Origin: Blastocystis sp. Blastoise
Lineage: Eukaryota > Protista > Bigyra: Opalinata
Reading direction: 5' to 3'
NCBI GenBank assembly: GCA_039096225.1
Contig: JBBPEB010000032.1
Span: 744,001-808,000 of the forward strand
DNA: 64,000 nucleotides
Each line of letters begins with the position of its first letter. The first letter of the stretch is position 1. The notes beneath the pieces are model-generated. The model was not told the origin of the DNA. It searched no databases and saw nothing but the letters and a program-made list of their open reading frames with translations. Shown here in pieces: positions 12,847-51,952 of this stretch. Position numbers and translations under genes: made by a program.

Positions 12847-14886
12847 ATGTTAAATAAGTTTTCTATAATTGTAGCTGCAACCGATCGACTTGGTATTGGT
12901 TTGAAAGGAAGTATTCCTTGGAGACTTCGTGAAGATATGAAATATTTCAAACAAATTACTTGTACTACTGAAGTATATAGATGATGATAATAATAAATAA
13001 ATGAATATAAATAGGATCCTGAGAAAAGAAATGCAGTGATCATGGGTCGTTTGACTTATGAATCTCTTCCTGAACAATACAGACCTTTAAAAGATCGTAT
13101 TAATTATATTTTATCTCGAGATGAATCCACTATTGAGTAAATTATTTAATATTTTTATTATTCTTTTTTTTTAAATATAATAATAATAATAAATTAATAT
13201 ATAAATATAGAAAATATGGTAATATAGAGAATGTAATAGTATGTTCTAGTTTAGATGAAGCTTTATTGAAAGTATTTAATCGAGTTGAAACTCCTTTAAT
13301 TGAGAAAGTATTTATAATTGGAGGGGGTCAAATCTATAAATCAGCTATTCATTTACCTGAATGTGAATATATATATATAACTAAAATTCATTCTACTATT
13401 GATTGTGATACTTTCTTTCCTATAATTGATAACTCATTTGAATTAACAGTATATTATTTTATTTATTTATTTATTTATTTATTTATTATTTATTATTTAT
13501 TATTTATTTATTATTTATTTATTTATTTATTATTTATTTATTTTTTTATTATTTATTTATGTATATTTATTATTTATTTATTATTTATTATTTTTTTTAT
13601 TATTTTTTTATTATTTATTTCTTCTTCTTCTTCTATAGTCTCATTCTGAAGATAAAATAGAAAATGAAATATCTTTTTGTTTTGATATTTATAAAAAGAA
13701 AAATTCATGTATATATATATATAATATATATATAATAATAATTCTATAGCTTTTCTTCTTCCTCCTGTAAGAACAGATATTAATGTATTTATATAATATA
13801 ATATAATATATATATATAAATAGGAGCATGAAGAATATCAATATTTGCATATGATTCGTCATATATTAGATCATGGCGTCTTACGAGGAGATCGAACGGG
13901 AACAGGAACTCGATCTGTATTTGGAACTCAAGTATATATTATTATTATATTATTATTATTATTATATATATATATATATAGATGCGTTATTCTCTTCGTG
14001 ATAATATAATACCTGTATTAACAACGAAACGTGTGTTTTGGAGAGGAGTAGTAGAAGAATTATTATGGTTTATTCGTGGAGACACAAATATGTATCATTT
14101 AAAAGATAAGAATATTCATATATGGGATGGAAATGGAAGTCGAGAATTTTTAGATAGTTGTGGTTTAACAGAACGAGAAGAAGGAGATCTAGGTCCTATA
14201 TATGGATTCCAAGTATATATATATATATATAATAATAATAATAATAATACTATTATATATATAGTGGAGACATTTTGGAGCTGATTATGTAGATTTTAAT
14301 CACGATTATTCTAATCAAGGAGTAGATCAAATTAAACATATTATTGAAACACTAAAACACAATCCTAATGATCGACGAATCATTCTTTCTGCTTGGAATC
14401 CTGCTGCTCTTCATTTAATGGCTTTACCTCCTTGTCACGTAATGTGTCAATTTTATGTCGCTAATGGTGAATTATCATGTCAAATGTATCAACGTAGTTG
14501 TGATATGGGTTTAGGTGTTCCATTTAATATCGCTTCTTATTCTCTTCTTACTCATATTCTATGCTCTATGACTGGACTTAAACCTGGTGAATTCATTCAT
14601 GTGATGGGAGATACTCATGTATATATCAATCATAGAGACGCTCTTGAAGTACAATTAACTAGAGAACCAAAACCTTTCCCTAAAGTATATATATATATGT
14701 AAATATATTATTATTCTTTTCTAGTTAATTATCAAAAATAATCATGAAAATATCGATGATTTCGTATTTGATGACTTTGAATTAGTATATATATATATGT
14801 TTATATATTTATATGCTTATTATATAATATATATATAGGTTGATTATAATCCTTATGGTGCCATTAAAATGAAAATGGCTGTTTAA
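12847..14886 (+). CDS. DHFR-TS: Bifunctional dihydrofolate reductase-thymidylate synthase, copy A (9 introns)
   Basis: [93 protein letters not shown]. Introns 12973-13014, 13137-13210, 13449-13638, 13709-13749, 13785-13823, 13932-13981, 14213-14264, 14685-14724, 14785-14838. Confidence 0.98.
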
Positions 14887-15311
14887 TTCTAACTGTAAAA
14901 CACATTTGACATCATAAAACATACGAATTGCTACGTATACTTGCCATTATAGTTATATTGTCTAAATTATCAAATTGTTTCATACATATTTATTTGGATT
15001 CATTTTTCGTTTTACAAATTATTATTTATACAATAACATGCATATAAAAGTATTATAAATATTAAAATTAGATAATAAACAATTATATGAAAAGAAATTA
15101 GTTTATAATATTTTTTTATTTTTCATAGAAATCAATGAAAGACAACTCTCTAAATATGTTTAATAAAATTACAGAGGATAGAATTGTGTTAAACGATTTA
15201 ATTAAAACAAACATTTATTTAAATGAATACTTCTCAATTTGAGCCTAAAATTCGTTTTTTTACATGGGATTATCGAATATCTCATTCTTTTAAAAGATTC
15301 TTTTAATTTCT

Positions 15312-15894
15312 ATGACTAATGCATTAGAGCCAAAAGAGTTCTTATATTGGAGAGACGAACAGCTTTACGATTCGATTGTCCTTATTTTTGCGCATCACCT
15401 AAAATTTATTAAAGAAGATGAAGTTAAAAAAGGAATATATACATTATTTGGGAAGAAAATAAATAAAGTAGAATTATGTGGTATTATTGTTAGTGATATT
15501 CAGAAAGAAGACTATCATCTTATAACAATTGATGATGGGACTGGATTGGCTAAATGTACACTATGGAATCGTCTTTATGAGCAATGCTTCGAAACAAATG
15601 ATGATTCTATATGTCAATTGGTCAAACTTTGTGGTACAATAAAAAATATTCCTTTTGGTGGTGTATACGCTGCTTCTTCAGATTCCTGTCTTAGTTCTAT
15701 GTATATATTAGTAACTAAAAAATGATTATATATTATATTTAAGATATTTTTGTAATGTATTAGAATATATATATATATATAGAAGAGTAACTATTTCAAA
15801 TATGAAGATAGTCAATGATTGTAATGAAGAAATGGTACAATGGCTTAAAGTGATAAAGGCACACAAATTGAATTTTAATAAGAATAATAGTTAG
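15312..15894 (+). CDS. STN1: STN1-like OB-fold protein (CST complex), 1 intron
   Basis: KINKVELCGIIV...ITIDDGTGLAKCTLW with an STN1-type N-terminus; second exon ...DCNEEMVQWLKV. A separate bona fide RPA2 lies at 60230-61612. Confidence 0.7.
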
Positions 15895-49199: not shown

Positions 49200-49738
49200 A
49201 AAATAAAAGAATAAAATATATATACATTCAATCATTATATACATTACTTTTTTTTATTTCTCTTCTACTATTCTTTAAATAGAGAGACAACATAATTAAT
49301 AGCTATTTTTATATTTGATTTTTATTTATAAAATAATGATTTTTGTTCTGTTTTACAATTATAAATGCTTATTAAATTTGTATATATATTTTATAAACAT
49401 TAACAAATAGATATTTAATACATATACGAATATGTCTTATATTAAATATATATTGTAATTATTATCAATTAATATATATAAATGAAGATATATTTGTATC
49501 AAATTTCTGACATATTATCATTTATATAATAACTCTCAACATAAAGGTGTATTTTATAAATATATATAAATGTACATATAATATTGTTTGTTTTATAAAA
49601 GAAAAGCAAATAAATAAATAAAATACAATTATAGAATATTGCGAACAATAACGTGATTTATTTTATGTTTACATAAATAATAAAAAGATTTACATAGTTA
49701 ATAAAAAAAAGTGTATATATATATATATATAGTTAGAA

Positions 49739-51952
49739 TTAAACAGCCATTTTCATTTTAATGGCACCATAAGGATTATAATCAACCTATATATATATTA
49801 TATAATAAGCATATAAATATATAAACATATATATATATACTAATTCAAAGTCATCAAATACGAAATCATCGATATTTTCATGATTATTTTTGATAATTAA
49901 TTTAGGGAAAGGTTTTGGTTCTCTAGTTAATTGTACTTCAAGAGCGTCTCTATGATTGATATATACATGAGTATCTCCCATCACATGAATGAATTCACCA
50001 GGCTATACAATATTATATATATATATATATATAATATACTTTAAGTCCAGTCATAGAGCATAGAATATGAGTAAGAAGAGAATAAGAAGCGATATTAAAT
50101 GGAACACCTAAACCCATATCACAACTACGTTGATACATCTATATATATATATATATATATATATATATATATATATATATATATATATATATATATATAT
50201 ATATATATATATATATATATATATATATATATATATATATATATATATATATATATATAACATATATATATATACTTGACATGATAATTCACCATTAGCG
50301 ACATAAAATTGACACATTACGTGACAAGGAGGTAAAGCCATTAAATGAAGAGCTATATATAATAATAAGTATAATAATAATAATAATAATAATAATACCA
50401 GCAGGATTCCAAGCAGAAAGAATGATTCGTCGATCATTAGGATTGTGTTTTAGTGTTTCAATAATATGTTTAATTTGATCTACTCCTTGATTAGAATAAT
50501 CGTGATTAAAATCTACATAATCAGCTCCAAAATGTCTCCACTATATATATAATAGTATTATTATTATTATTATTATTATTATATATATATACTTGGAATC
50601 CATATATAGGACCTAGATCTCCTTCTTCTCGTTCTGTTAAACCACAACTATCTAAAAATTCTCGACTTCCATTTCCATCCCATATATGAATATTCTTATC
50701 CTTTATATATATTATTATAATTATTATAGTATATGATATACTTTTAAATGATACATATTTGTATCTCCACGAATAAACCATAATAATTCTTCTACTACTC
50801 CTCTCCAAAACACACGTTTCGTTGTTAATACAGGTATTATATTATCACGAAGAGAATAACGCATCTATATATATAATAATAATAATAATAATAATATAAT
50901 AATAATATATACTTGAGTTCCAAATACAGATCGAGTTCCTGTTCCCGTTCGATCTCCTCGTAAGACGCCATGATCTAATATATGACGAATCATGTGCAAA
51001 TATTGATATTCTTCATGCTCATTAATATCTGTTCTTACAGGAGGAAGAAGAAAAGATGAATTTTTCTTTTTATAAATATCAAAACAAAAAGATATTTCAT
51101 TTTCTATTTTATCTTCAGAATGAGACTATAGAAGAAGAAGAAGAAATAATAAAAAAATAATAAAAAAATAATAAATAATAATAAATAAATAAATAAATAA
51201 ATAAATAAATAAATAAATAAATAAATAAATAAATAATAAATAAAAAAATAATAAATAAATAAATAAATAATAAATAAAAAAATAATAAATAATAAATAAA
51301 TAATAAATAAATAAATAATAAATAAATAATAAATAAATAAAATAATATACTGTTAATTCAAATGAGTTATCAATTATAGGAAAGAAAGTATCACAATCAA
51401 TAGTAGAATGAATTTTAGTTATATATATATATTCACATTCAGGTAAATGAATAGCTGATTTATAGATTTGACCCCCTCCAATTATAAATACTTTCTCAAT
51501 TAAAGGAGTTTCAACTCGATTAAATACTTTCAATAAAGCTTCATCTAAACTAGAACATACTATTACATTCTCTATATTACCATATTTTCTATATTTATAT
51601 ATTAATTTATTATTATTATTATATTTAAAAAAAAAGAATAATAAAAATATTAAATAATTTACTCAATAGTGGATTCATCTCGAGATAAAATATAATTAAT
51701 ACGATCTTTTAAAGGTCTGTATTGTTCAGGAAGAGATTCATAAGTCAAACGACCCATGATCACTGCATTTCTTTTCTCAGGATCCTATTTATATTCATTT
51801 ATTTATTATTATCATCATCTATATACTTCAGTAGTACAAGTAATTTGTTTGAAATATTTCATATCTTCACGAAGTCTCCAAGGAATACTTCCTTTCAAAC
51901 CAATACCAAGTCGATCGGTTGCAGCTACAATTATAGAAAACTTATTTAACAT
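49739..51952 (-). CDS. DHFR-TS: DHFR-TS copy B (10 introns)
   Basis: Spliced CDS matches copy A apart from two synonymous changes seen by eye; private introns 50701-50741, 50353-50398, 50139-50275, 50003-50039. Confidence 0.97.

What the first reader, a model, noticed from the sequence alone, without database searches (positions are those of the whole stretch)
13709..51060. Near-identical DHFR-TS copies differ by seven precise, reciprocal intron presence/absence events
Seen: 13 intron positions in total, 6 of them shared. Present only in A: 13709-13749, 13785-13823, 14685-14724 (B reads aattcat|cttttc, attaat|gagcat, cctaaa|ttaatt). Present only in B: 50701-50741, 50353-50398, 50139-50275, 50003-50039 (A reads ttaaaa|gataag, cctgctg|ctctt, tgtcaa|atgtat, cttaaa|cctggt). 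Every empty site is base-perfect. By eye only two synonymous SNPs separate the exons here (CAT/CAC, GAC/GAT), and the last shared intron, 60 nt from a polymorphic one, is identical. Inference: whole introns appear or vanish faster than point mutations accumulate, whereas intron positions are normally stable over very long periods. This points to a highly active intron-editing process, such as spliced-RNA/cDNA-templated gene conversion or repair.
Basis: partly seen in the sequence, partly recalled or inferred. Interest (0 to 1): 0.95.

Follow-up and report, generated by a model that had tools for sequence, protein, structure and literature searches.

The report
Reciprocal intron loss in duplicated DHFR-TS
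Two almost identical copies of an essential enzyme gene in a tortoise-gut protist (Blastocystis) have each cleanly lost different introns, probably by being rewritten from their own spliced RNA, but no raw DNA reads were available to confirm that the assembly is right.

Summary
Copy A (12847-14886, +) and copy B (49739-51952, -) encode the same 485-aa DHFR-TS. They have 13 intron positions: 6 shared, 3 A-only and 4 B-only. Every empty site is exact, and the exons differ by two synonymous SNPs.

The copies lie in a 4.2-kb inverted two-gene duplication. The small divergent neighbour gene adds two more A-only introns, so the block holds nine differences.

Outgroups polarise three sites as losses, in both directions:
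- A-only intron 12 is at the identical site in an AT-rich relative.
- B-only introns 9 and 11 are at identical sites and phases in distant eukaryotes.

No target-site duplications or introner copies were found, and intact reverse-transcriptase elements are present. RNA contigs show intron 12 spliced exactly.

The best reading is at least five short-patch, RNA- or cDNA-templated intron deletions. The claim "faster than point mutation" is only partly supported, because divergence runs from 0% in a homogenised core to 4.6% at one edge.

No DNA run could be laid. The published assembly methods argue against an RNA-polishing artefact.

The scan has already flagged the same phenomenon at about ten other loci of this genome.

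The parts
10715..14894 (.). Duplicated block, copy A: small neighbour gene, shared divergent promoter region and DHFR-TS
   Evidence: Self-BLAST and MAFFT. Homology to copy B starts near 10708-10715 and ends 8 nt after the DHFR-TS stop.
49731..53993 (.). Duplicated block, copy B, inverted relative to A and about 35 kb away
   Evidence: No terminal inverted repeats or target-site duplication at the ends.
12847..14886 (+). DHFR-TS copy A: 10 exons, 9 introns (positions 1, 2, 3, 4, 5, 6, 8, 12, 13), 485 aa
   Evidence: The X1 RNA contig runs 25 nt into the A-specific 3' flank with no mismatch.
49739..51952 (-). DHFR-TS copy B: 11 exons, 10 introns (positions 1, 2, 3, 6, 7, 8, 9, 10, 11, 13), identical 485 aa
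13709..13749 (+). Intron 4, A only, phase 1; direction not polarised
   Evidence: Absent from all outgroups.
13785..13823 (+). Intron 5, A only, phase 0; direction not polarised
14685..14724 (+). Intron 12, A only, phase 0; ancestral, lost in copy B
   Evidence: Identical site (FPK|L) in relative L011/L012. Spliced exactly GT..AG in RNA contigs of X1 and X2.
50701..50741 (-). Intron 7, B only, phase 0; direction not polarised
   Evidence: With its flanks it is unique in the genome.
50353..50398 (-). Intron 9, B only, phase 1; old position, lost in copy A
   Evidence: Same site and phase (WNPx G|GT) in L026, L027 and L028.
50139..50275 (-). Intron 10, B only, 137 nt, essentially G(TA)nG; loss in A inferred from its position between introns 9 and 11
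   Evidence: Inference from adjacency only.
50003..50039 (-). Intron 11, B only, phase 0; old position, lost in copy A
   Evidence: Same site and phase (LK|PG) in L027 and L028.
10812..11171 (-). Neighbour gene copy A: 85-aa product, no Pfam family, 3 exons
11061..11095 (-). Neighbour intron n1 (35 nt, GT..AG on the minus strand), A only
10934..11000 (-). Neighbour intron n2 (67 nt, GT..AG on the minus strand), A only
53630..53887 (+). Neighbour gene copy B: single uninterrupted 85-aa ORF, two amino-acid differences from A
11695..13448 (.). Core of the block with zero differences between copies (promoter, DHFR-TS exons 1-3, introns 1-2); probably homogenised by gene conversion

Best explanation
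A 4.2-kb two-gene segment (a small 85-aa gene and DHFR-TS, transcribed divergently) is duplicated in inverted orientation 35 kb apart in a tortoise-gut Blastocystis. The assembly statistics match isolate Rus-B.

Both ancestral copies carried all, or nearly all, of the 15 introns. Each copy has since lost different introns exactly at the splice junctions. Copy A lost 7 and the run 9-10-11. Copy B lost 4-5, 12 and both neighbour-gene introns. That is at least five events.

Each event replaced a short stretch of the gene (at most about 160-420 nt of mRNA sequence) with the spliced version. Two routes could do this. One is homologous recombination with cDNA made from spliced mRNA by the genome's resident reverse transcriptases. 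The other is break repair templated directly on the transcript.

Shown: the exact differences, the intact identical reading frames, splicing of intron 12, loss polarity at three sites, absence of insertion signatures, and presence of intact RT genes.
Inferred: loss polarity at the other six sites, the RNA template, and the number of events.
For: - Exact GT..AG presence/absence at nine sites in two genes.
- Intron 12 lies at the identical codon boundary in relative L011/L012, whose only three introns all coincide with positions 1, 6 and 12. The chance of that is about 7e-7.
- Introns 9 and 11 are at identical sites and phases in L026, L027 and L028. The chance of two or more coincidences is about 0.001.
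- Losses run in both directions, so a single processed copy cannot explain the pattern.
- Boundary slide is only 0-2 nt, there are no target-site duplications, and introns resemble each other only through (TA)n. Intron 7 is unique in the genome.
- At least 20 RVT_1 matches score over Pfam's cut-off, many in open frames of 2,400-2,800 aa. One was checked as a 2,025-aa ORF.
- RNA contigs are fully spliced, and the 14684>14725 joint is GT..AG in two runs.
- The published assembly used Nanopore/Flye, racon, and Polypolish/POLCA with Illumina DNA (PMC12129017). None of these deletes 35-137-nt blocks at splice junctions.
Against: - No DNA reads could be laid, so the intron states rest on one assembly.
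- Six of the nine sites are not polarised. The near relative lacks them, so gain in this lineage is not excluded for introns 4, 5, 7, 10, n1 and n2.
- The last intron (13) is kept in both copies and the losses are internal, which fits the classical 3'-primed cDNA model poorly.
- Clustering of the losses is not significant here (P = 0.12).
- The shared positions 9 and 11 in distant eukaryotes could in principle be parallel gains.
Confidence: 0.68

Rival explanations
1. Mixed history. Introns 9, 11 and 12 were lost, but some of the unpolarised copy-specific introns (4, 5, 7, 10, n1, n2) are recent gains. One route would be insertion or expansion of G(TA)nG-like sequence, which in this genome is already a complete intron.
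For: The AT-rich relative L011 has only 3 of the 13 introns. The distant outgroups also lack 4, 5, 7 and 10. Intron 10 is almost pure (TA)n. Repeat expansion creating introns has been reported in Cryptococcus (PMC2395259 summary).
Against: There are no target-site duplications or flanking repeats and no family of similar introns. Every polarisable site is a loss. Intron 10 sits between two demonstrably lost introns in a copy that lacks all three. Six precise in-frame insertions within about 0.5% divergence would be needed.
Confidence: 0.12
2. Older duplication with concerted evolution. The block is much older than its near-identity suggests. DNA gene conversion keeps the core and exons alike, and the intron losses accumulated at a high but not extraordinary rate.
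For: Divergence runs from 0/1754 in the core to 4.6% at the neighbour's 3' end. In strain X2 the 3' UTR differs by 16 mismatches and 7 gap positions in 192 nt, while about 600 nt of CDS differs by 2. Exons are therefore poor clocks here.
Against: DNA conversion would also homogenise intron states. Shared introns 6, 8 and 13 in the variable 3' half differ only by two microsatellite-type changes. Even at 4.6% divergence, losing 9 of 30 intron copies is very fast.
Confidence: 0.12
3. Assembly or polishing artefact. One or both copies do not exist in DNA as written, for example through spliced sequence entering the consensus or a chimeric join.
For: No DNA run was available for checking. Repeated 4-kb blocks in an extremely AT-rich, diploid genome from a xenic culture are hard to polish (PMC12129017).
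Against: By the published methods RNA was used for annotation, not polishing, and the short-read polishers used make small edits only. The 4.2-kb repeat is shorter than typical Nanopore reads, and both copies have unique flanks on both sides. An artefact would not remove different introns from each copy while leaving six untouched. Earlier notes of this scan report the same pattern at about ten other loci, including transposon copies (unchecked).
Confidence: 0.08

Closest known systems
mRNA-mediated (reverse-transcriptase) model of intron loss: cDNA from spliced mRNA recombines with the gene. The three competing models are summarised in PMC3652778. Precise losses are catalogued in Dictyostelium (PMC4683709, which reports 441 precise intron losses in D. 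discoideum), and internal losses by recombination in Cryptococcus (PMC2395259).
   Same: Exact removal at splice junctions, runs of neighbouring introns removed together (4-5, 9-11, n1-n2), an intact reading frame, and a reverse-transcriptase source in the genome.
   Different: The losses are seen between two copies inside one genome at about 0.5% divergence, not between species. They are reciprocal. The patches are short and internal, with the 3'-most intron kept. The apparent rate is far higher (9 of 30 intron copies).
Introner and transposon-driven intron gain (PMC9860276)
   Same: Many intron presence/absence differences arising over a short time.
   Different: There is no repeated intron family and no target-site duplication, and the polarised sites are old introns. 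The features that could be tested were not met.
Processed or semi-processed retrocopies
   Same: Introns are missing exactly as in mRNA.
   Different: Copy B keeps the shared promoter, the divergent neighbour gene and 10 introns, and copy A also lacks introns. Neither copy is a retrocopy of the other.
Intron presence/absence polymorphism in Daphnia populations (PMC4202315)
   Same: Intron differences among very similar sequences.
   Different: Those cases are interpreted as recent gains. Here the polarisable cases are losses.

Membership tests
mRNA/RT-mediated intron loss | Deletion exact to the splice junctions, with the reading frame preserved | tested here: met
   Nine of nine sites are exact and both copies read the same 485 aa.
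mRNA/RT-mediated intron loss | The missing intron was present ancestrally | tested here: met
   Met for introns 12, 9 and 11. The other six are not testable with the sequences within reach.
mRNA/RT-mediated intron loss | Adjacent introns lost together | tested here: inconclusive
   Runs 4-5, 9-10-11 and n1-n2 exist, but the permutation test gives P = 0.12 for DHFR-TS alone.
mRNA/RT-mediated intron loss | Bias towards the 3' end of the gene | tested here: inconclusive
   Introns 1-3 are kept in both copies (P = 0.07), but they lie in the homogenised core, and the last intron (13) is also kept.
mRNA/RT-mediated intron loss | A reverse-transcriptase source in the genome | tested here: met
   At least 20 RVT_1 matches over the cut-off, with open frames up to 2,787 aa. 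A 2,025-aa ORF with RVT_1 was confirmed. RT activity itself was not tested.
mRNA/RT-mediated intron loss | The gene is transcribed and the intron is spliced | tested here: met
   Spliced contigs in X1 and X2, with joint 14684>14725 GT..AG. Splicing of introns 4, 5, 7 and 9-11 was not observed directly.
Introner / transposon-derived intron gain | Many near-identical copies of the intron sequence in the genome | tested here: not met
   Intron 7 with its flanks is found only at its own place. There is no intron-intron similarity beyond (TA)n. The other introns are too short or too simple for the genome search.
Introner / transposon-derived intron gain | Target-site duplication at the insertion | tested here: not met
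   0-2 nt of boundary identity at all 15 introns.
Genomic deletion by microhomology | Short direct repeats at the deletion ends, often with imprecise deletion | tested here: not met
   0-2 nt repeats, and nine of nine deletions are exact.
Bifunctional DHFR-TS | DHFR and thymidylate synthase domains in one reading frame | tested here: met
   Pfam DHFR_1 in exons 1 and 3 and Thymidylat_synt in the 3' exons. One frame of 485 aa ends in ...KMKMAV.
Processed retrocopy | Lacks the parental promoter and all introns; poly(A) tail and flanking duplication | tested here: not met
   1.7 kb of upstream sequence and 10 introns are shared, and the block ends have no such marks.

The most novel reading that the evidence does not exclude
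In this extremely AT-rich genome most introns are G(TA)n-like tracts that may be prone to breakage. Breaks inside them would be routinely repaired from the gene's own spliced transcript, either directly or through cDNA. Exact intron erasure would then be an ordinary by-product of DNA repair, running orders of magnitude faster than in any organism measured. It would also homogenise the exons of paralogues. If so, intron loss could be watched in real time in culture.
Probability: 0.22. Interest if true: 0.85.

Novelty: new member of a known kind. Interest (0 to 1): 0.66.

Why it matters
How introns are lost is an old question, argued almost entirely from comparisons between species that diverged long ago. 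Here the before and after states of nine introns sit side by side in one genome, in an essential and well-understood gene. Loss is shown in both copies, and the patch sizes can be bounded at no more than 160-420 nt.

If DNA reads confirm the assembly, this culturable protist would allow three things. The loss rate could be measured directly. The cDNA model could be separated from direct RNA-templated repair. One could also test whether (TA)n-rich introns are preferentially erased.

There is a practical point too. Public gene models and paralogue-based dating in this genome will mislead if intron loss and exon homogenisation are this active.

Tried and rejected
Following the tool's advice I laid the part of copy A that covers all seven sites instead.
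- **No DNA run** holds the locus, so the decisive DNA-read test could not be done. X21 and X22 laid nothing.
- **Looking for other DNA with copy A's intron state:** the copy-A ORF that reads from the fused exon into intron 12 is not on record elsewhere.
- **Closer relatives were not found.**
  - The 140-aa TS exon found nothing above 76% identity.
  - The 79-aa DHFR exon found nothing at all.
  - The 47-aa exon found nothing above 70%.
  - The representative search's top hit, P0121, is a tandem TS-TS protein and not a relative.
- **Uninformative loci:** P0003 and P0021 lie on unrelated metagenome contigs, and no DNA was returned for P0007. P0122 and P0126 are uninterrupted ORFs and say nothing about introns.
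- **Volvox africanus** shares none of our positions. Its intron near position 12 is one codon off.
- **L011** shows no flank synteny with either copy and lacks the neighbour gene, so the parental locus and introns n1/n2 could not be polarised.
- **The joined (spliced) protein** was never assembled for a search. All searches were exon by exon, by reference. Full-length annotated orthologues, including those of the sister tortoise isolates, therefore stayed out of reach of the length-filtered search.
- **Two slips corrected:** a mistyped reference, and wrong coordinate order followed by a too-short query.
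Full report
**Observation.** I aligned window 12847-14886 with the reverse complement of 49739-51952 and listed every gap and mismatch.
- There are 13 intron positions. Six are shared (1, 2, 3, 6, 8, 13).
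- Three are present only in copy A: intron 4 at 13709-13749, intron 5 at 13785-13823 and intron 12 at 14685-14724.
- Four are present only in copy B: intron 7 at 50701-50741, intron 9 at 50353-50398, intron 10 at 50139-50275 and intron 11 at 50003-50039.
- All are GT..AG, 37-137 nt long and 2-12% G+C.

Translating exon by exon with phase tracking, without joining the exons, gives the same 1458-nt, 485-aa frame in both copies. Pfam finds DHFR_1 in the 5' exons and Thymidylat_synt in the 3' exons. The exons differ only at 13850 (T/C) and 14083 (C/T), and both changes are synonymous.

**Surroundings.** The two genes are not part of a large palindrome. They lie in a 4.2-kb inverted duplication (A about 10715-14894, B about 49731-53993) separated by 35 kb of unique sequence. 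The assembly is 33.34 Mb in 34 contigs, the window is C21:744001-808000, and these are its only two copies.

The block ends 8 nt after the DHFR-TS stop. It shows no terminal inverted repeats or target-site duplication.

The block also holds a second, divergently transcribed small gene. In copy B this gene is one 85-aa ORF (53630-53887). In copy A it is split by two GT..AG introns (11061-11095 and 10934-11000, minus strand) that B lacks exactly. It has no Pfam family. The block therefore carries nine intron differences in two genes: five A-only and four B-only.

**Organism and assembly.** Earlier notes of this scan call the genome a tortoise-gut Blastocystis. The size, contig number and G+C of G000 match isolate Rus-B in Table 1 of PMC12129017 (33.3 Mb, 33 scaffolds, 23.1% GC).

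That paper assembled Nanopore reads with Flye. It polished with racon on Nanopore reads, then with Polypolish and POLCA on Illumina DNA. It also reports a diploid k-mer signal. By its methods, RNA was not used for polishing. Neither that paper nor the other Blastocystis genome papers searched describe intron presence/absence between paralogues.

**Reads.** No DNA run holds the locus. The best holders are X1 (0.48 of the sampled words, about what exon-only sequence would give) and X2, a poly(A) metatranscriptome.

On copy A 13660-15100, X1 gives one 1501-nt spliced contig and X2 one 817-nt spliced contig. Both show the joint 14684>14725 (GT..AG), so A-only intron 12 is spliced exactly. Both run colinear with copy A across the four B-only sites.

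X1's contig runs 25 nt into the A-specific 3' flank without a mismatch, so copy A is expressed. X2 is another strain. Its 3' UTR is A-like but differs by 16 mismatches and 7 gap positions in 192 nt, while about 600 nt of coding sequence differs at only two places.

These are contigs of RNA runs. They say nothing about intron states in DNA.

**Direction of change.** Three lines of outgroup evidence were found.
1. Logan contigs L011 and L012 (25% G+C; TS about 76% and DHFR about 42-50% identical) carry a DHFR-TS with only three introns. These lie at our positions 1, 6 and 12, and for 6 and 12 at the identical codon boundary. Chance expectation for that is about 7e-7. A-only intron 12 is therefore ancestral, and copy B lost it.
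2. Three contigs of distant eukaryotes (L026, L027, L028; 37-40% G+C) have an intron one base into the codon after W-N-P-x. That is the exact site and phase of B-only intron 9.
3. L027 and L028 also have an intron at L-K|P-G, the exact site and phase of B-only intron 11. Two or more coincidences are expected with P of about 0.001.

Copy A therefore lost introns 9 and 11. Intron 10 lies between them in a copy that lacks all three, so it most simply went in the same event. Volvox africanus shares none of the positions. Introns 4, 5, 7, n1 and n2 remain unpolarised.

**Gain signatures.** None of the 15 introns has more than 2 nt of identity between its ends and the adjoining exon, so there are no target-site duplications or deletion microhomologies. 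Introns resemble each other only through (TA)n. Intron 7 with its flanks occurs nowhere else in the genome.

**Enzymes.** The genome has at least 20 RVT_1 matches above Pfam's cut-off. Most sit in open frames of 1,100-2,800 aa, and about a dozen have identical scores. One checked copy is a 2,025-aa ORF whose only Pfam domain is RVT_1.

**Mechanism.** The most economical account is at least five events, each replacing a short stretch of gene with its spliced form. Measured in mRNA, the largest possible patches are 213 nt (introns 4+5), 231 nt (7), 420 nt (9-11) and 162 nt (12).

This fits recombination with cDNA of spliced mRNA, the reverse-transcriptase model summarised in PMC3652778. It also fits repair templated directly on the transcript. 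The data cannot separate the two routes. The patches are internal and the last intron is kept, which resembles the internal losses reported for Cryptococcus (PMC2395259) more than a 3'-primed full-length cDNA.

**The clock.** Point differences are unevenly spread:

| Segment | Differences |
|---|---|
| Neighbour gene's 3' end | 10 of 219 nt |
| Intergenic region | 8 of 1,675 nt |
| 11695-13448 | 0 of 1,754 nt |
| DHFR-TS exons 4-14 | 2 of about 970 nt |

Shared introns 6 and 8 differ only by microsatellite-type changes. The block has probably been partly homogenised, and its true age may be nearer the 4.6% edge than the 0.2% exons.

Even so, nine of 30 intron copies have changed while overall point divergence outside intron 3 is 21/3602, or 0.6%. 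In this one gene the clustering of missing introns (P = 0.12) and the retention of the first three (P = 0.07) are not significant. The first three introns also lie in the homogenised core.

**Standing.** Earlier notes of this scan report the same phenomenon at about ten other loci of this genome: duplicates of helicase, kinase, Era and a Pol III factor, and several transposon families. None had DNA-read support, and I did not re-test them.

This case adds:
- an essential, well-understood gene;
- a second gene in the same block;
- loss demonstrated in both directions;
- bounds on patch size;
- a check of the assembly methods.

**Verdict.** This is very probably real recent reciprocal intron loss by an RNA-templated route. 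I put the confidence at 0.68, with artefact at 0.08, pending DNA reads.

Noticed in passing
G000 C10:55024/63615, C13:624268/632859, C14:664277/672868/681360, C29:412516/421012: The RT-bearing elements (one long ORF whose only Pfam domain is RVT_1) often sit in head-to-tail pairs or triplets spaced about 8.5-8.6 kb apart with near-identical scores. This suggests tandem arrays of a recently active retroelement of unclear class.
   Followed up: partly
window 14839-15030 (X2 contig): In a second strain seen in a gut metatranscriptome, the DHFR-TS 3' UTR differs by 16 mismatches and 7 gap positions in 192 nt, while about 600 nt of coding sequence differs at two places. Synonymous sites look far more conserved than neutral expectation.
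   Followed up: no
window 50139-50275: A 137-nt intron that is essentially G(TA)nG. The read-laying tool refuses it as a repeat. Whether such an intron is spliced efficiently or is prone to breakage is unknown.
   Followed up: no
window 30550-31794 and 37490-38100: Two segments in the interval between the copies belong to a family with more than 35 copies genome-wide at 65-77% identity. Elsewhere the two segments lie directly adjacent, so this is probably a dispersed element or gene family rearranged here.
   Followed up: no
window 32727-36977 versus G000 C33:268236-272643: An older paralogous segment (68-82% identical) that could serve as a more diverged comparison for intron turnover.
   Followed up: no
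L011 3284-4790: The nearest accessible relative (Logan contigs from ERR14042346/ERR14042348, 25% G+C) has an intron-poor DHFR-TS: 3 introns against 13. It lacks the old introns 9 and 11, so heavy intron loss may be general in this group.
   Followed up: partly
window 15312-15725: The ORF downstream of copy A has a weak match to the Stn1 telomere-protein family (E = 2.6e-4, below Pfam's cut-off).
   Followed up: no
P0121 (533 aa, representative library): A protein from an unknown organism with two thymidylate-synthase domains in tandem and no DHFR domain.
   Followed up: no
L023 1-3699 and 6001-8722: In Volvox africanus a partial, inverted thymidylate-synthase copy lies about 2.3 kb from the full DHFR-TS gene.
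   Followed up: no
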